A DNA stretch of 59,162 nt, counting the filler, from Platydemus manokwari (taxonomy: Eukaryota): assembly GCA_037951405.1 (NCBI GenBank). It is 6 parts of 6 records of this genome, joined end to end, with 100 filler letters (N's around TTAATTAATTAA, not from the genome) between each part and the next. Parts side by side here need not be neighbours in the genome. Positions count along the whole stretch, not along the records: positions 29,798 to 40,905 come from JBBMOY010905531.1; 5 more parts are not named here. One strand, given 5' to 3'. Positions 31,134 through 39,330 of this stretch are shown in pieces. The position numbers and the translations under genes are program-made. The notes below the pieces were generated by a model that worked only from the letters and a program-made list of their open reading frames with translations, was not told the DNA's origin and made no database searches. How positions within the stretch are numbered: position 1 is the stretch's first letter; each line of letters opens with the position of its first letter.

Positions 31134-31482
31134 TTAAATTGGACTTAATCTTGAATCAGCACATGCAGTCATGAAAGCACTTTGAGCATCAGAAAAACCA
31201 GCACCTAATGTGAAAGTTTCTGAAAAAATCGAATTATTTTATGAAATGAAATTTAAATCGATAAAAAATGTCCTGACTTTGTCTGAATAAAAATTCTATA
31301 ATTAATAAATTAAAATATTTCAAATAAATAAATATCAAATAACCTGCTACAAAGCCAAACCCAGTACAACATGTTACATGTCCAGCATTGCAAGCACTAA
31401 TGCATGATACAGAAGCGATGAGACCAATGATTCCACAATTGGTTTGGCTTATTAAGCCAATCAGAAGAAATATTATCGACAT
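31134..31482 (-). CDS. Small secreted hydrophobic Cys-rich protein, paralog A (74 aa, possibly eroding)
   Basis: Exon 1 31482-31344, phase-1 intron (G|gttatt..ttttcag|), exon 2 31219-31134. Product MSIIFLLIGLISQTNCGIIGLIASVSCISACNAGHVTCCTGFGFVAETFTLGAGFSDAQSAFMTACADSRLSPI*. Same intron position as paralog B. Confidence 0.75.
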
Positions 31483-31929
31483 AAACAAAAACCTGATACT
31501 GCATATAAATGAATTGTGATTCAATCATAATCAAATCAGTTCACCAAAAGTCAGAAAAGTATAAAGTTTTGATTTGAAACACATACATAAAATTACCAAG
31601 TTATTTTTCTGACTACATTATTAATAACCAAAAATAAAATCGATATTATAATTTGTTATTTATTCAATTTTTTTGTTTATTTATATTTTTTTGAAAACAT
31701 TGATAAATATGAACCCATAACAAGCAAAGTTCCATCAATTATTATCGAATTTATATATGGCGGAGTTTTAATAAAATAGTCTGGACTTGTGTGACTGCTG
31801 AGTAAAATCAATACTAATACTTAAACAAAAAATAAAAGAATATTAATTAAAAAATTAAATAACATTCATAAAATTTCTCATATAATCTTTCACAATTTGA
31901 TACATCATTTAAATAATATAAATTATTAT

Positions 31930-32000
31930 TAATAATAATAATAATAATAATAGTAACAATAATAATAATATAAATAATAAAAATAATAATAATAATAATA
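31930..32000. repeat. Imperfect (AAT)n microsatellite
   Basis: Interrupted AAT run. Confidence 0.85.
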
Positions 32001-33229
32001 GAATTATTTCTATAAATAAATATTTAAATAAAAGAATAGTTATAATTAATAATAACAAATATTTATTTAAAGATTGACGTTTGTTTAAATGAAATAAAAT
32101 ATCAAATTAGTAACTAAGGTGTATGTGAAATTGCATTAAGTATATGTTATTGAATCGATAACGAATATTGCCTTCAAGATAAGATATTCCCCATCAAATG
32201 TTTTGTTTAAAATTTCCATTTATTGTGAATATTTCTAATCCAATTCCTCTTAATTTTAATTGATATTCCGAACTATATAAATATTTTCCAAATGTCTAGA
32301 GAAACGAGACGAGGATATTTATCTAGCGAAAAGAATCTTGAACCGTAAATCTGTTTTATCAACAAGATAACAAGTCCGAATTACGAATTTTTCACTAGAG
32401 GTTATTAGCATAATCAACAACGAACCTCGTTGTACAGGTCCAAATCAATTTTATTATAAAATCATTACTAGAATATTGTATAAATATAGAAAATAAGTTT
32501 ATTTCGATAGTGAGTTAGCATCAGAAACACAAGTAGATTCTAGATTGAACCCAGTTCAACTAGAAGTACTTGTATCTAAAAACAAAACTTAACACAAATC
32601 TGTTCCAAGGGGTTAAGGTACCAAGTAGGCCCTAAACTCCAATAATATCTAAACCAAGGGCTCTTACAGGGTTACCCATAAGAGACCAAGCAAAATCTTA
32701 AACACTCTATATGCATAAAGTCAGTAAAATCAAGTAATTAATCATAAACTCTCCACTCTTGTGCCTGGTCATTTGTTAAATAACATCATTATTGTATCTC
32801 ATCAATATTCTTATAAATTAATTTGCTTATATTGTAACTATTATTTCATATCACAATATATTTATAAACGAATTGGGTTGTTTTTCTATGTTAAATAATT
32901 CGTGTTATAATTATTATACACTGCAACTTTGGAGTCATATATTTTGCGAAATATTCAATAAATAAATTCAGTAAATAAAAGTAGAACACGTGCGCACATG
33001 TTGGGAGAGAATTAGCAATAATAATCTTTAATACATTATAACCTCAACACTATCTACAGACCAGATTAAAGTGCAGTTTTGCCAATGTCATTTCATGTAT
33101 TACATACGTTCATTTAAATATCACCTCTTTATGACCAATTTAAATTTCTGTAGTACGATTTTTACTAGAATTACAAATATTTCTTTTATCAACATATTTT
33201 AACCAGTTCATATTTGAGCCGGTTTTTTA

Positions 33230-33630
33230 ATTTTGAAACATTGTTTCCCTTGTTTTTCACCATTGGTCTTGTTAATGCTTTTTAAAAGTTGTTGACACGG
33301 GATAATTTTAAATTGATAAATGTAACTTTTCTTTCGAATTCTACTAAATGGCCTTATGCTCTGTTGCCACTATCCTGCGTCACCATCCATTTTCCATTTG
33401 CTGTAAAGTACATCGTGACTATATGTGTCTCGAGTTCAAAAAATAAGTTCGTGTATGTTTGACATTTTCTGAGCGAATAGTAGACAAAAACAATGGCATA
33501 CATAAACATTTGATCAGTTTTACTCCATTTCTGTTGAATAGTGATTCGTAGGTTATACTTGTTTGCATATTTTTGCCTGCACTATCTAATGGTTCAACAG
33601 GTCCTTTACCCTTATTTATTGGTGTCACTT
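33230..33630 (-). mobile_element. Possible DNA-transposon (Sola-like) relic
   Basis: SITYESLF..KCLCMPLFLSTI resembles the Y.L....VC..MFL.TL motif recalled from Sola-type transposases; no further support. Confidence 0.2.
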
Positions 33631-34080
33631 TTCAAAGGTGCACAATCCATTAAATATTCTCTATGATCTTGGACAGAATATTTTTAGTGGTTCTAGAATA
33701 TCTAGATGATACTCAATTTCCAATTTTGAAATGATGTAGTTTCGCCTTTTTTTCACAAACTTCCTCATAGCGCTGTTGATTACATTTTATTTACAATACT
33801 GATTTTTACAATCGGTTTCCATTCATTCAATGAATTCAGTTTCGAAAATTATTTTCAACAATATATTGTCATGAAGCTTGGGCATATATTTTGAATGTAA
33901 TAGTATGTTATTGCCTCTGCAATACATTGGATAATTATGTAATAAATTATAACATAATAAATATTATCAAATTAATTTTTAATTAATTTTAAAATTTAAA
34001 TGAAAATATTTAACATTGCTAAACGTTTTATATATGATATATTTTTTACCGAATATTTTAAGATTATTTTCCGTTTGAGT

Positions 34081-34087
34081 TATAAAA
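34081..34087 (+). promoter_or_regulatory. Candidate TATA box of Cys-rich paralog B
   Basis: TATAAAA 95 nt upstream of the ATG at 34176; the AT-rich context limits specificity. Confidence 0.4.
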
Positions 34088-34175
34088 TTTCAATTGAATC
34101 AATTCAATTAGATGAATTATCAGGTTTTGTTTAAATTATACTTTTAATTAAAATTTTTGCAAATCTATTTTTGAA

Positions 34176-34593
34176 ATGTTTAAAACTGTGTTGACAATAT
34201 TTTTACTGATTGGTTTAATAAACCAAATCGATTGTGGATTCATCGGTTTTATTGGTTATTGCCCTTGTGTTGCTGCTTGCCATGCAACATTTGTAACATG
34301 TTGTGCTGCACTGGGTTTCGTCGCAGGTTAATTTATATTGACTTTTTAAATTTTATTGTCAATTCGATGAATGGATTCAATCGATATTTTTATTTGATTA
34401 ATATATATTTAATTTATTGATTATGAAATATTGGAGACCTTTAATCAATTCCAATCTAACTATACAAAGTAATTTGATTTTTTCAGGAACATTTACATTG
34501 GGTGCCGGAATGCCTCCAGCACTTTTTGCTTGTTCCGCTGCTCAAGGAGTGTGCATAGCTGCATGTGCTGCTGCAATTGTCAGCCCGATATAA
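34176..34593 (+). CDS. Small secreted hydrophobic Cys-rich protein, paralog B (85 aa, intact)
   Basis: Exon 1 34176-34326, intron 34327-34486 (G|gttaat..tttcag|), exon 2 34487-34593. Product MFKTVLTIFLLIGLINQIDCGFIGFIGYCPCVAACHATFVTCCAALGFVAGTFTLGAGMPPALFACSAAQGVCIAACAAAIVSPI*. Signal peptide, 8 Cys in the predicted mature part, AATAAA at ~34682. The ORF-track call 34232-34420 is in the wrong frame. Confidence 0.88.
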
Positions 34594-35217
34594 ATGATTT
34601 GATTTGGATTATCAGTCACAAATAGATATATAGATTCATTATCAGCATTAGATTTATATTTTTCATTTACTTTGTTTGATAAATAAATATTTTTTAGTTT
34701 AAATCTTTCTTAATTGTAAACAATGTTGTCAGAGGATCTTAAATAATTTAATGAGTTACAACATTTGATTATATTATATTTGATTTGTCGTTGTTGATTT
34801 CATTGAATTAGTAATTGAACCATTTGAGTAGTAGCATTTGAAATAAAAGGTCTCATTTGATCAATATTAATTGCGATAATTAAAATTGCTTATTTTAATT
34901 ATTAGCAACCGTGACGAGAATATGAATGTCTCAGAGATGATAAAGAAAAATTTATTCAATATTTTATCACAAGCTATTTGTGATTGAAATCTTTTGGAAA
35001 TCAATAATCTTTTGACATGTAATGAGCATCTTTTAAAATAAATCACCTGATATTGTGAAGTCCAATTCCTTTATTAACATCTTTAACATTTGAATCGTTC
35101 TTTTACTTGTCAAAGCTAATTAAAATTGGTTTCTGTGAGAAAATATTAAATTTTAAAATATAACTTTTCTCAAATCCTACTGAATGAACTTCTGTTTATA
35201 ACATATCTTTCATAATA

Positions 35218-35218
<1 letters not shown>

Positions 35219-35290
<72 letters not shown>
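35219..35290. repeat. (ATT)n microsatellite
   Basis: About 24 units with one interruption; explains the poly-Ile ORF 35170-35403. Confidence 0.95.
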
Positions 35291-35543
35291 GTCAAGATTA
35301 GAATCATTTTATTTATTTTTATGTATTGAAACATTAATTTTATCGACAAAAGACTGAATTTCACTTTGTTATTTGCGATGATCCATATTTTGAATTTGTA
35401 CATTGTAATATAAAATATCTAAATTGCCTTGATGTTCTTAAATTATTCCTGAAGTTTTATTGATTATTTGATTGATTTTCTTATATATGAATCTCCATAT
35501 AAAATCAATTCGGTTACATTAGGTCATATAACCACTTGAATAC

Positions 35544-36046
35544 TGTAAGTAGCTACAGTTTTATAAAACACGTATCGAATACGAACTGAAAAGGAACGGT
35601 ATCAAATTAACTATTTATAAACAATCATATAAACAAATTAATATATGTTGGAAAATTTAATGCAATTTAAAATTCTCACGTCCCGCTGTCTTTAAAATCT
35701 TTGATTATCTTTGTATTTTTATTTGACATTGTATCGAATATTCTACATAAATATCTACATAAAAAATCTCTCATTCTTCTATTTTTTTATAACTTCTTTA
35801 CATCTTCTTTATATCTTCTTTGTATATGTTTTATACAGTCTCAACATATTCCTCTTTTTCCCATAATTTTCAGTCATTGATCATGCGTGGTCACCATGTA
35901 AGCCGCTACTATTTTATAAAACACACATTGAGAACGAACTGAAAAGGCACGACACCAAATTATGTATTTGTATACAAATCGATACAAAGTCAAATTTTAT
36001 ACGAAATTAAATGTTTAAAAATGTATTTCAATTTCAAATTCTCACA
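35544..36046 (+). repeat. Interspersed repeat (two internal copies of a ~130-nt core); inverted partner at 38081-38613
   Basis: The core GCTAC..TTTATAAAACAC..GAACTGAAAAGG..AAATTCTCAC occurs at ~35550-35680 and ~35905-36046. The pyrimidine-rich spacer aligns with the reverse complement of 38280-38450. Confidence 0.75.
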
Positions 36047-37173
36047 GGTACGAAGATCAATTATTAGTAATCTCGAATTACGATTGGAAATTCAGTCATT
36101 TTTATTTTTAAACTGATATTTGTGATAAATTTAATGTTCTGAATTGTTTTGATTTGTAAAACAAACTTATATTTGATTTGAGAAACACCATTCATTCGTA
36201 CTGACGAAACAAATGATTTCGAATTTAATTCTCAATCCAATAAACTAAAAAATTTTCTCGCTTTTTTCACGTTTCGTGTAACAGTTTATTTAATTAAATG
36301 AAAAACAAGAAATCTGAATTGATTCTCATTTTTCTAATTACGATTTCATATGATCGACACTGATCGTACATTATGTGGAAATTTTGAAACCGAGGTGGTT
36401 TCTCTTTTGAAAATATAATTATTCGATTACATATTGGTATATTCAATTATCATGGTATATGGGCTTTGTCATTAATCAATGCACCGCATTAAATTTCAGA
36501 AAAATCACATTTGATGATTATTTAAAGTTCTTTTATATTGAGTATTATTAATATCATCACGTATATGTTGATATGGTGCCAAATTGTCATCAAGAATGAT
36601 AACAAATTTTGAGTAAAGCGACCCTGAGTTTAAATTCGTAAATGAGAGAATTAAAGAAAGGTGGATTCGATATGCATGGAACATGTCTGACGATGAACTC
36701 CTTGCTAAGATTGTTAATACTAGCATTATAATTTAGTGATATGTATTATTTTGTTCTTTATCGGTTCTATCATTTTTTTTTATTTTCTTATATCTCAAAT
36801 TAGGAAATACATCATGGATTTATTTTTCTAAAATGTATTTATATTTCCCTTTAACCACACAAGTTCTTTCCATAGTTTTAATATCTTTCTAATTTCTTTA
36901 TCTATTTAAAGTATTATTTTATTGTATTTTGTGATTTGATGGTGGAAGTCATAGATCTGCCGGAAATGATGTTCGTTGTTTATTTATTGATTTTTTCTTC
37001 CAATCCCATGATCATTGACATTTTGCCATTTTTTTGATATTTATCGTTTTGTTTATTGTTTCTGATTATTTATTTTTTTCATCTATGTTGGCAATAACAA
37101 GATAAAATGAAAATAATTTACCTCACTAATTATGATAATCAATATTCTATTAAACAACTCTGTTTTAATAAAG

Positions 37174-37618
37174 ATATATGATGACTGGATCATACAACAA
37201 TTTCTTCCGTATTTTCGATCGAGATACCAACAAAGATGTTACGCTAGAAGTTAATCGGGATTTAATAATGTCAGACAAACCCTTAGTGCCACGAATTATT
37301 TCCGCCGAAGGTGGTCATCAAAGACGCCGTGATGAAATCAGTGTTGACTGTATGGATTTTCAAAGACGCTTGTTGCATTTGGCTTGGCATCCTCAACAGA
37401 ACATTCTTGCAATAGCAGCTACCAATAATTTATTCGTTCTCGAAAGTCGTAACCTCAAGATTACCCACAATCAGTCATGTGCAAATACAATCGACCACAA
37501 TGCAACGAGTTCCGGTGCGTCAGAATCCATCAATTCAATGACGACTTGTTCCACCTCGGGCTATTCCAGCTCATTAATTGTGCCATCAAGTTCAGATGAT
37601 CGAATGGAGCTTGACTAA
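37174..37618 (+). CDS. PPP2R2: Protein phosphatase 2A regulatory subunit B55 (PR55), last coding exon
   Basis: After acceptor aag| at 37173 the exon reads YMMTGSYNNFFRIFDRDTNKDVTLE...RRRDEISVDCMDFQRRLLHLAWHPQQNILAIAATNNLFV, the highly conserved B55 C-terminus. Stop at 37618; AATAAA at ~37816. Confidence 0.95.
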
Positions 37619-38080: not shown

Positions 38081-38613
38081 CGTGGGAATTTTTAAATGAA
38101 TTAATTTTATAAAAATTTAATCCAGATTTTATATAAAACTATATTATTTGTTTGAATATATAATTTGGTGTCGTGACTTTTCAGTTTGTTTTCAATGCAT
38201 GTTTTATAAAATAGTAACAAGTTAGATGACAACCGTACATCTGGATTCGATTATGAGAAGATCATTGATTGAAAATGTTGCAAGAGAAGACGGAATTATA
38301 TTGAAAATATATAAAGAAGATGCAGAGAATGTTTAAAGGAAATGTAAAAAAGATAGAAGAATTAGAGTAACTTATGTAGATAAATATATAGAGTATTCGA
38401 TACAAAATCAATTAAGAGGAATAAGATAATCTAATATTTTAAAGAAAGGGTAATTTGATAAATTTTAAACGAATTAAATTTTTAAAGATTCAACCAGATT
38501 TTATTTAAAATAATATTAGTTTGTTTATATTATTGTATTTAAATATATAATTTGATATCGTGACTTTTCATTTCGTTTTCAATACGTGCTTTATAAACTA
38601 GTCTCAGGTTACA
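38081..38613 (-). repeat. Inverted copy of the 35544-36046 repeat
   Basis: TGGTGTCGTGACTTTTCAGTTTGTTTTCAATGCATGTTTTATAAAATAGTAAC and a second internal core at ~38550-38613 are reverse complements of the 35.5-36.0 kb cores. Confidence 0.75.
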
Positions 38614-38619
38614 TCATAC

Positions 38620-39330
38620 ATAGCGTCATTTTTATGCAAATTCAGTCGAACATATTCCACATTTATTCCAGTGCAGAATTATTTGCTTTCTCATGATTTC
38701 AATTTAATTAATCCTGCTAATTTAATATTAATTATGAAATCTATTTCAAGGCTGTTTCATTGTGGATGATATTTACTTTCCCAACATTTATCATTTGCTT
38801 TTGGCCACTAATCGCTCTATGATTACAAAAAACTTGGCTCGACACTAATAATTAATGCAGTACATTTACAATTAAAAACGTTTCCAACTGTGATATCTGG
38901 TCTCAGTGGATATTGACACACCTACGATAGCTAGTTGACTTCAAAAAATTTAAAAATGATTTGCACTTTAATCTGGATAAAACTATATTGATTATAGTTG
39001 GTACAAATAAACTGGTTGTAATAATAAATCACATTTTAATGACATTACAGATATTTGCCAAAATTAATTAGTGACAGAGCATATGAATGGATTTATATGA
39101 TCGAGTAGATTTTATAAATTCAAGGATTTATTCTCTCGCATCTATTTAGTGGCTCAAGAAAAATCATTATGATGGACAATTTTGTCAGAACCATCTTTAG
39201 ATAGCTAATTTTGAAAATGAAAGAGGCCACAGTTGACAATTTTTTGCCTGATTTAGAAAGCTTAGTCATAGATCACTTGTTGTTTCAACACGATATTTCT
39301 GCATGATATATGGTAATGGTGCATGTATTG
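38620..39330 (+). mobile_element. Possible hAT transposase relic
   Basis: SNCDIWSQ at ~38883-38906 (first catalytic D motif), VTE-M at ~39071 and TCCFNT at ~39275 occur in the order of the hAT D.W / VTD..N / C..H motifs. Frames are broken. Confidence 0.33.

What the first reader, a model, noticed from the sequence alone, without database searches (positions are those of the whole stretch)
31134..34593. Divergent pair of tiny hydrophobic Cys-rich secreted proteins from a patchily distributed, uncharacterised family
Seen: two paralogous two-exon genes sit back to back, with the same phase-1 intron after GFVA. Paralog B has a signal peptide and a 65-aa mature part rich in Ala/Gly/Cys, with no Asp, Glu, Lys or Arg (C..AC......CCAA.G..AGT.T.GAG.PPA..AC.AAQG.C.AAC....SP). 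Recalled, unverified: this layout resembles the small Cys-rich 'class V zygote-specific protein-like' family (G...Y..CQ.GC.....CY.AAG.TFGT.T.GAG.P.A...CN.A.G.C.AAC). I recall that family from fungi, oomycetes, algae and scattered invertebrates, with no established function. Inference: a disulfide-stapled helical hairpin that may be membrane-active or surface-active (defence peptide, mucus or adhesive component), possibly acquired horizontally and then duplicated.
Basis: partly seen in the sequence, partly recalled or inferred. Interest (0 to 1): 0.72.

Follow-up and report, generated by a model that had tools for sequence, protein, structure and literature searches.

The report
Charge-free cysteine-ladder secreted protein gene pair
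Two head-to-head two-exon genes encode tiny, very hydrophobic cysteine-rich proteins with a signal peptide; they belong to a real but uncharacterised family found across eukaryotes, one copy looks intact, the other has lost key residues, and nothing supports recent horizontal transfer.

Summary
Paralog B (+, 34176-34326 and 34487-34593) and paralog A (-, 31482-31344 and 31219-31134) are divergently transcribed two-exon genes with a phase-1 GT..AG intron at the same codon.

An exhaustive search with the exon-1 profile found an 87-aa beetle protein. Exon 2, which was not used in that search, matches the beetle protein's C-terminal half. Fifteen relatives followed, from Rhizoctonia/Ceratobasidium, a chytrid, the amoebozoan Planoprotostelium, a marine protist transcript and metagenomes. 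Some carry the source names 'Zygote-specific protein', 'Cysteine-rich protein' or 'Hydrophobin'. There is no Pfam family and no solved relative.

The family has a signal peptide and an essentially uncharged mature part. Its cysteines form a mirrored ladder, C-x3-C-x6-C(C)...C-x6-C-x3-C. An AlphaFold2 model of the beetle protein (pLDDT 78) is a helix-loop-helix hairpin.

B keeps every family feature. A has lost two ladder cysteines and the invariant split-codon glycine, and has gained charged residues.

The intron sits at the same place in Planoprotostelium and in 13 genes from 12 fetched metagenome-type contigs. Third-codon GC is host-like, and no bacterial, archaeal or viral relative was found. 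HGT is therefore not supported; the trees are unresolved.

No RNA data exist and function is inferred. The exons were searched apart; no joined model was used.

The parts
34176..34326 (+). Paralog B exon 1: signal peptide (about residues 1-20) plus the first half of the mature part, with ladder cysteines C31, C35, C42 (plus C43 and an extra C29). The last base is the first base of the split Gly codon.
   Evidence: The exon-1 profile hits P0001, P0002 and P0005. hhalign to family profile columns 18-50 gives E 6.8e-7.
34327..34486 (+). Paralog B intron: 160 nt, phase 1, GT..AG, GC 19%.
   Evidence: The same position and phase occur in Planoprotostelium and in 13 genes on 12 fetched metagenome-type contigs.
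34487..34593 (+). Paralog B exon 2: loop motif (G)TFTLGAGMPPA, second helix with C66, C73 and C77, C-terminal SPI, stop TAA.
   Evidence: 73% identity to P0005 residues 53-74, E 3e-9. hhalign to profile columns 52-84 gives E 9.2e-16.
31344..31482 (-). Paralog A exon 1: signal peptide and first helix with C1, C2, C3 and C4 kept.
   Evidence: hhalign to profile columns 18-50 gives E 4.1e-10.
31220..31343 (-). Paralog A intron: 124 nt, phase 1, GT..AG, GC 16%.
31134..31219 (-). Paralog A exon 2: divergent. The split codon is Glu instead of the invariant Gly. A 7-residue deletion removes ladder cysteine C5, C6 is replaced by Phe, and D, D and R are gained. The open frame and the SPI end are kept.
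31483..34175 (.). Shared 2.7-kb region between the two divergent 5' ends. The first 300 nt upstream of each ATG are no more alike than shuffled sequence. It holds an (AAT)n tract and a repeat of high depth at about 32488-32735.

Best explanation
The locus holds an old inverted duplication of a small two-exon gene. The gene belongs to an uncharacterised, eukaryote-wide family of proteins of about 85 aa.

Shown:
- Each gene encodes an N-terminal hydrophobic leader. It ends in a small-x-small site before a conserved Gly (fungi and beetle: ..QA|GP; this lineage: ..xC|G).
- A mature part of about 63-65 aa follows, made almost only of Ala, Gly, Cys, Val, Thr, Leu, Phe and Ile.
- Six cysteines are spaced C-x3-C-x6-C ... 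C-x6-C-x3-C, in exact mirror symmetry around an invariant AGTFTLGxGxP loop.
- The phase-1 intron splits the Gly codon of that loop.

Inferred:
- The leader is cleaved in the ER.
- The two halves fold into an antiparallel helical hairpin stapled by three disulfides (C1-C7, C2-C6, C3-C5).
- The seventh cysteine, the second of the CC pair, is spare.
- The product leaves the cell as a rigid hairpin with an uncharged, largely apolar surface.

Most likely role (speculative): it works at a hydrophobic interface. It could self-assemble into, or coat, an extracellular layer such as a wall, egg or resting-stage envelope or cuticle-like matrix. It could also partition into lipid.

Paralog B is the working copy. 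Paralog A is an old copy (dS about 0.7-1.1) that can no longer form two of the three staples. It is either decaying or doing something else.

The gene is most simply an inherited eukaryotic gene that small-ORF annotation often misses, not a recent transfer.
For: Gene models and paralogy.

Family membership:
- The exon-1 profile finds P0001 (E 2.7e-10), P0002 (8.3e-8) and full-length P0005 (9.1e-4) among 1.84 billion proteins.
- The unused exon 2 matches P0005 residues 53-74 at 73% identity, E 3e-9.
- P0005 recruits 14 more proteins.
- Each exon aligns to its own half of the profile and the two meet at column 51.

Leader and charge-free mature part: alignment A2 and the counts.

Cysteine ladder:
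- Positions 31, 35, 42 and 66, 73, 77 pair to a sum of 108 in P0005 and in five-sixths of the listed members that share its numbering. The motif spacing is conserved in all 13 checked.
- L001 and the GPVGWW subgroup lack only the second Cys of the CC pair.

Fold: the AF2 model has helices 20-45 and 61-82, pLDDT 78. Same-size eukaryotic clusters are the top Atlas fold hits.

Purifying selection: dN/dS is 0.40 for exon 1 and 0.24 for exon 2.

Ancient intron. Host-like GC3 of 0.11-0.28.
Against: - No RNA evidence exists for either gene. The laid run is DNA-like and shows no splice joint.
- Disulfides were not checked on coordinates, because the tools return none.
- On the Kyte-Doolittle scale the mature segments are borderline transmembrane (1.6-1.9). 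One source calls a member 'transmembrane protein'.
- Most members have seven cysteines, an odd number.
- The leader of this lineage ends in Cys at -1, which is allowed but uncommon.
- No function is published for any member in the searched library.
- The joined protein of the window was never searched or folded. The model is of a 40-65% identical relative.
Confidence: 0.55

Rival explanations
1. It is a small integral membrane protein. After the leader is cleaved (or kept as a first span), the two Ala/Gly/Cys-rich helices sit in the bilayer as a tightly packed hairpin, proteolipid-like, perhaps forming oligomers. The cysteines would be free or lipid-modified rather than disulfide-bonded.
For: The best 19-residue segments of the mature part have Kyte-Doolittle means of 1.6-1.9, at or above the usual 1.6 threshold. 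The 'transmembrane protein' label on the Ceratobasidium member P0007 agrees. Helices of 26 and 22 residues are long enough to span a bilayer. The complete lack of charge fits a membrane setting.
Against: Six cysteines are conserved in exact mirror spacing, as expected for a cross-linked antiparallel pair and not for lipid-facing residues. There are no flanking positive charges to fix a topology. Translocon-scale sums are positive for every segment. Conserved Asn, Gln, Tyr, Ser and Thr lie inside the helices.
Confidence: 0.2
2. The gene entered this lineage by horizontal transfer from a fungus or another microbial eukaryote and then duplicated.
For: Most named relatives found by the word search are fungal. 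Only one named animal sequence was retrieved (P0005). The distribution looks patchy.
Against: - The window genes share the exact intron position and phase with Planoprotostelium and with 13 genes on 12 fetched metagenome-type contigs. The two fungal genes examined (Ceratobasidium, chytrid) have their intron 13 codons upstream.
- GC3 is 0.11-0.28, like the AT-rich host.
- B shares a 3-4 residue insertion (..YG.C..) with the beetle protein and the AT-rich metagenome relatives, not with the fungi.
- Atlas clusters of the same size and fold include one with Arthropoda as commonest phylum.
- This very gene and its closest relatives are missing or miscalled as exon-1-only proteins in the databases. 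Patchiness is therefore partly an annotation artefact.
- Trees of 31-35 columns have no supported branch.
Confidence: 0.08
3. Paralog A is a decaying pseudogene, not a second working gene.
For: Against the family profile it has lost two of the six ladder cysteines (C5 by a 7-residue deletion, C6 changed to Phe). It has also lost the invariant Gly of the split codon (now Glu) and gained D, D and R in a family that is otherwise uncharged. Its exon 2 composition departs from the alignment.
Against: The frame, start codon, both splice sites and the homologous stop are intact despite dS of about 0.7-1.1. Pairwise dN/dS is 0.24-0.40, below what one neutral branch would be expected to give. Exon 1 is closer to the family profile than B's exon 1.
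Confidence: 0.4

Closest known systems
Unnamed family of small eukaryotic cysteine-rich proteins. Sources label members 'Zygote-specific protein', 'Cysteine-rich protein', 'Hydrophobin' or 'transmembrane protein' (for example Rhizoctonia solani A0A8H3D6S4 and Callosobruchus chinensis CAH7728321.1). [quoted passage not shown]
   Same: Length, leader, charge-free mature part, cysteine ladder, AGTFTLGxGxP loop, C-terminal P-x-P/SPI end and, in many members, the phase-1 intron in the loop Gly codon.
   Different: B has an extra Cys two residues before C1, and Cys at the -1 position of the leader. It also has His for the invariant Asn and Ile for the invariant Met. A lacks C5, C6 and the loop Gly. 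Homology to the Chlamydomonas protein itself was not tested, because its sequence was not retrieved.
Plant alpha-hairpinins, defence peptides with a CX3C-Xn-CX3C motif (PMC7191063, PMC11591084).
   Same: A helix-loop-helix held by disulfides between mirrored cysteine motifs on the two helices.
   Different: Alpha-hairpinins have four cysteines, are shorter and are typically charged (my own knowledge). The family here has six to seven cysteines with 4/7 spacing and carries no charge. No sequence similarity was found. This is an analogy of architecture, not membership.
Fungal hydrophobins
   Same: Small, secreted, cysteine-rich, hydrophobic proteins. Two Rhizoctonia members of the present family are labelled 'Hydrophobin' by UniRef.
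   Different: No Pfam family, hydrophobin models included, matches any of seven full-length members even at E up to 10. The eight-cysteine hydrophobin pattern is absent. The predicted fold is helical, whereas hydrophobins are beta-rich (my own knowledge).
Twin CX3C / CX9C helical hairpins of the mitochondrial intermembrane space (small Tim and CHCH proteins; my own knowledge)
   Same: An antiparallel helical hairpin with cysteines in mirrored positions.
   Different: Those proteins have no signal peptide, are charged, and are oxidised in mitochondria. No sequence match was seen in the Pfam or PDB searches.

Membership tests
Small 'zygote-specific / cysteine-rich' protein family (no Pfam entry) | Significant sequence similarity to family members over both halves | tested here: met
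   The exon-1 profile reaches P0005 at E 9.1e-4 library-wide. Exon 2 matches P0005 at E 3e-9. hhalign to A3: B exon 1 E 6.8e-7 and exon 2 E 9.2e-16; A exon 1 E 4.1e-10 and exon 2 E 4.5e-6.
Small 'zygote-specific / cysteine-rich' protein family (no Pfam entry) | Mirrored cysteine ladder C-x3-C-x6-C ... C-x6-C-x3-C | tested here: met
   Met in B (C31, C35, C42 and C66, C73, C77, the same numbering as P0005). Not met in A, which keeps C1-C4 and C7 but lacks C5 and C6.
Small 'zygote-specific / cysteine-rich' protein family (no Pfam entry) | Invariant loop AGTFTLGxGxP | tested here: met
   B reads A-G(split codon)-TFTLGAGMP. A reads A-E-TFTLGAGF, so the invariant Gly and the Pro are lost.
Small 'zygote-specific / cysteine-rich' protein family (no Pfam entry) | Hydrophobic leader with a small-x-small site before Gly, and a mature part with almost no charged residue | tested here: met
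   Alignment A2 and the charge counts. B's mature part has none. A's exon 2 has D, D and R, and its split codon gives E. Cleavage itself was judged by eye, because no signal-peptide predictor was on hand.
Small 'zygote-specific / cysteine-rich' protein family (no Pfam entry) | Homology to the Chlamydomonas class V copy B protein that gives the name | not tested
   That sequence was not retrieved. Only the source names of the Rhizoctonia members and a Daphnia annotation in PMC9548574 link the name to this family.
Hydrophobins | Match to a hydrophobin profile and the eight-cysteine pattern | tested here: not met
   No Pfam hit for the window exons or for seven full-length members. Members have 6-7 cysteines in another pattern.
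Alpha-hairpinins | CX3C-Xn-CX3C motif in a short helix-loop-helix defence peptide | tested here: inconclusive
   The motif is formally present inside the larger ladder, and the model is helix-loop-helix. The charge, size and number of cysteines differ, and homology cannot be shown.

The most novel reading that the evidence does not exclude
The family is an ancient, eukaryote-wide class of secreted, completely uncharged, triple-disulfide helical hairpins. They would act as surface-active or self-assembling coat proteins, a helical counterpart of hydrophobins that is also present in animals. The window's pair would show one copy keeping that role and one re-purposed after losing two staples.
Probability: 0.25. 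Interest if true: 0.65.

Novelty: new member of a known kind. Interest (0 to 1): 0.45.

Why it matters
The family has names in databases but no Pfam model, no structure and no tested function. It is nevertheless conserved from Amoebozoa and fungi to arthropods, with an unusual rule: no charged residue in the mature protein, and a mirrored six-cysteine ladder.

This work gives it a testable architecture. It shows that its members are easily missed or miscalled as exon-1 fragments, and that an intron position is shared across supergroups. For this genome, it adds two unannotated genes and removes a tempting but unsupported HGT story.

Tried and rejected
- Pfam and NCBIfam scans of all four exons gave nothing.
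- Word-index protein searches with exon 1, and with the exon-2 reading frame, gave nothing.
- Atlas feature searches gave only sub-threshold leads: 0.89, 0.87 and 0.86 for exon 1, and 0.79 for exon 2.
- No RNA run was found. The one run laid was DNA-like contigs with no splice joint.
- Foldseek against PDB found nothing. VIA-align wide returned only generic helical bundles at Z below 8. A profile search of PDB sequences found nothing.
- The first two related-locus scans failed because the alignment held partial rows. They were repeated with full-length rows.
- Scans of bacterial and archaeal genomes and of viral contigs found no relative. These scans are pattern-based, so their sensitivity is limited.
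- Trees of the N-terminal and C-terminal blocks, kept apart, had no supported branch and did not even join A with B. They were rejected as evidence for or against HGT.
- Literature searches for the Chlamydomonas class V gene found only a Daphnia expression table.
- A motif scan for upstream exons of the neighbouring PP2A B55 gene gave only chance hits.
- The joined spliced protein of the window was never searched, aligned as one row or folded.
Full report
**1. The observation**

Reading the sequence confirms two small two-exon genes.
- Paralog B lies on the + strand. Exon 1 is 34176-34326, the intron is 34327-34486 (160 nt, GT..AG after a TTTTTTCAG tract), and exon 2 is 34487-34593 ending in TAA.
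- Paralog A lies on the - strand. Exon 1 is 31482-31344, the intron is 31343-31220 (124 nt, GT..AG), and exon 2 is 31219-31134.
- In both genes the intron is phase 1, after ..GFVA. The split codon is GGA (Gly) in B and GAA (Glu) in A.
- The two 5' ends face away from each other, 2.7 kb apart, so the pair is head to head.

The exons are clearly paralogous. Exon 1 is 60% identical (E 3e-17). Exon 2 is 47% identical with a 7-residue gap (E 3e-7). The repeat finder sees the same inverted duplication at the DNA level, 31323-31481 against 34189-34347 at 73%. There is no third copy in the piece.

The exons stand out in composition: GC is 36-50%, against 16-19% in the introns and 26% for the whole piece.

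**2. What it belongs to**

Pfam, NCBIfam and the word-index search found nothing with single exons. I therefore used the one exhaustive HMMER job on a profile of the two exon-1 peptides (A1).

It returned five proteins at E up to 0.001 among 1.84 billion.
- Two (P0001 and P0002) are exon-1-only gene calls. They run into an intron just after ..VVAG.
- P0005 is a full 87-aa protein from the beetle Callosobruchus chinensis.
- The other two, 1543 and 817 aa long, matched only 12-15 profile positions at a time and were not followed up.

Exon 2 of B had no part in that search. It matches P0005 residues 53-74 at 73% identity (E 3e-9). P0005 reads ..ATAGTFTLGAG.. without interruption, exactly across the proposed splice junction. 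This is independent support for the splice model.

P0005 then recruited 14 more proteins:
- Rhizoctonia solani and Ceratobasidium. Source names are 'Zygote-specific protein', 'Cysteine-rich protein', 'Hydrophobin' and 'transmembrane protein'.
- The chytrid Phlyctochytrium.
- The amoebozoan Planoprotostelium fungivorum.
- An MMETSP transcript.
- Two metagenome proteins.

Profile-profile comparison places each window exon on its own half of the family:

| Exon | Profile columns | E-value |
|---|---|---|
| B exon 1 | 18-50 | 6.8e-7 |
| B exon 2 | 52-84 | 9.2e-16 |
| A exon 1 | 18-50 | 4.1e-10 |
| A exon 2 | 52-80 | 4.5e-6 |

Column 51 is the split codon.

Atlas searches point to more members. Clusters of 84-98 aa have Basidiomycota, Mucoromycota or Arthropoda as the commonest phylum. 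They appear both by sequence features and as the top fold matches.

No Pfam family matches full-length members, and no solved structure is related by sequence.

The only literature trace of the family name in the searched library is a Daphnia gene. [quoted passage not shown] I did not verify by sequence that this gene, or the Chlamydomonas namesake, belongs to the family.

**3. Anatomy of the family**

The alignments show three parts.
- A hydrophobic leader ends in a small-x-small site before a conserved Gly.
- A mature part follows, with invariant residues including the cysteines, N36, Y39, V40, the block A50-G51-T-F-T-L-G56, G58, P60, S67, Q70, G71 and M74.
- The C-terminus ends in A-P-T-P. 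In this lineage it reads S-P-I.

The mature part carries 0-2 charged residues in 13 members checked.

The cysteines follow C-x3-C-x6-C(C) ... C-x6-C-x3-C. In P0005 they sit at 31, 35, 42(43) and 66, 73, 77. So 31+77 = 35+73 = 42+66 = 108, an exact mirror about the loop. B has the same numbering.

The second Cys of the CC pair is the only one that is dispensable. It is missing in L001 and in the whole 'GPVGWW' subgroup, which therefore has six cysteines.

An AlphaFold2 model of P0005 built on alignment A2 has mean pLDDT 78. It shows the leader helix (2-16), a helix at 20-45, a loop at 46-60 and a helix at 61-82.

From this I infer an antiparallel hairpin stapled by C1-C7, C2-C6 and C3-C5. I could not measure S-S distances because coordinates are not returned.

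PDB fold searches give only generic helical bundles.

**4. Secreted or membrane-bound?**

The mature segments are borderline on the Kyte-Doolittle scale (1.6-1.9).

I favour a cleaved, oxidised, secreted hairpin with an apolar surface (about 0.55-0.6) for three reasons:
- The cysteine ladder is mirrored.
- Polar Asn, Gln, Tyr and Ser are conserved inside the helices.
- There are no flanking charges.

A two-span membrane hairpin is the alternative (about 0.2).

Such a molecule should stick to itself, to lipids or to hydrophobic surfaces. My working guess is a coat or interface protein. That step is inference only.

**5. The two copies**

B keeps every defining feature. It has a few private changes: an extra Cys29, His for Asn36, and Ile for Met74.

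A keeps the leader and the first helix but has changed in exon 2:
- Glu replaces the invariant loop Gly.
- A 7-residue deletion removes C5.
- Phe replaces C6.
- Asp, Asp and Arg are gained.

The duplication is old. dS is 0.68 in exon 1 and 1.09 in exon 2. The first 300 nt upstream of each ATG and the 200 nt downstream of each stop are no more alike than shuffled sequence. The introns score only slightly above shuffles (98 identical positions against a mean of 92.4, sd 2.7, maximum 99).

Pairwise dN/dS is 0.40 and 0.24. With A's intact frame, splice sites and stop, this argues against long neutral decay. Whether A is a late pseudogene or a re-purposed copy stays open, at about 40:60.

**6. Horizontal transfer?**

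The phase-1 intron in the loop Gly codon is found at the identical place in all of these:
- both window genes;
- the AT-rich relatives L001/L002 and L003/L004/L006;
- Planoprotostelium;
- metagenome loci L012 (two tandem copies), L013/L014, L015 and L018-L020.

The Ceratobasidium and chytrid genes instead have a phase-1 intron 13 codons upstream, at ACNA|GYV.

Further points against recent transfer:
- Third-codon GC of A and B is 0.11-0.28, like the host. The neighbouring B55 exon has 0.34 in its conserved part.
- B shares a 3-4 residue insertion before C1 with the beetle protein and the AT-rich relatives, not with the fungi.
- Pattern scans found no relative in one genome each of 185,579 bacterial and archaeal species, or in viral contigs.

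Maximum-likelihood trees of the two halves, kept apart, have no supported branch, so phylogeny cannot decide.

The gene of this window is absent from the protein collections, and its nearest kin are miscalled as fragments. Much of the 'patchy' distribution is therefore likely annotation failure.

I put recent HGT at under 0.1.

**7. Limits**

- No RNA evidence exists for this locus.
The neighbouring exon at 37178-37618 is the C-terminus of a PP2A B55 subunit (E 3.5e-28 to human B55 alpha).
- The joined protein was never built, searched or folded. The structure shown is that of a relative.

**8. Verdict**

This is a correct and careful observation. The recalled family is real and B is a full member. 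The hairpin idea gains support. The HGT idea does not. Function remains inferred.

It is a new member pair of a named but uncharacterised family. Interest is moderate (0.45). It lies mainly in the family's odd chemistry and wide, under-annotated range.

Noticed in passing
window 37172-37618 (+): This is the last coding exon of a PP2A regulatory subunit B55. Its first 90 residues match human B55 alpha residues 357-444 at E 3.5e-28, followed by a 56-aa Ser/Thr-rich tail. A rough motif scan found no earlier B55 exon in the 7.4 kb to the left. The small-gene pair may therefore lie inside a long B55 intron or upstream of a distant exon.
   Followed up: partly
window 32488-32735: Contig depth in run X1 jumps to 450-930, against about 20-50 nearby. 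Many loose ends and short 'skips' occur there. This points to a short repeated element in the region between the two genes.
   Followed up: no
window 35537-35762 and 38372-38620 (inverted); 35544-35624 / 35897-35977 and 38151-38227 / 38538-38614 (direct): Four copies of an element of about 80-230 nt, 75-85% alike, flank the B55 exon in inverted and direct orientation. It looks like a MITE-like repeat.
   Followed up: no
window 34173-34360 and 34516-34557: Run X1 holds variant contigs over gene B with about 6% differences. Translated by hand, several are silent, and two in exon 2 (P61A, I74M) move towards the family consensus. None of the listed changes touches a cysteine codon. This is a second allele or a further copy in that sample.
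   Followed up: partly
L012:658-948 and L012:1304-1568: A metagenome contig (GC 55%) carries two tandem family genes, both with the Gly-codon intron. The second has lost the CC pair's second Cys and the QG before C6. Duplication with one divergent copy recurs in this family.
   Followed up: partly
L007:3113-3169 and L009:191-249: The Ceratobasidium and chytrid genes have their only intron 13 codons upstream of the common site. It is again phase 1, in a Gly codon after Ala (ACNA|GYV). This could be intron sliding or independent gain at a similar proto-splice site.
   Followed up: no
L016, L017, L021-L023, L025, L026, P0019: An intronless subgroup has a longer Trp-rich loop (AGTTGPVGWWAWLTSAAAGCS) and only six cysteines. 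It is seen in an MMETSP transcript and in metagenome contigs.
   Followed up: no
L001:1-145 and L001:2556-2700: The two ends of this 2.7-kb metagenome contig read as the same sequence by eye. It is a circularised or tandem assembly of the stretch holding the family gene.
   Followed up: no
window 31908-32031 and 35201-35331: Long (AAT)n / (ATT)n microsatellites lie in opposite orientation on either side of gene B.
   Followed up: no
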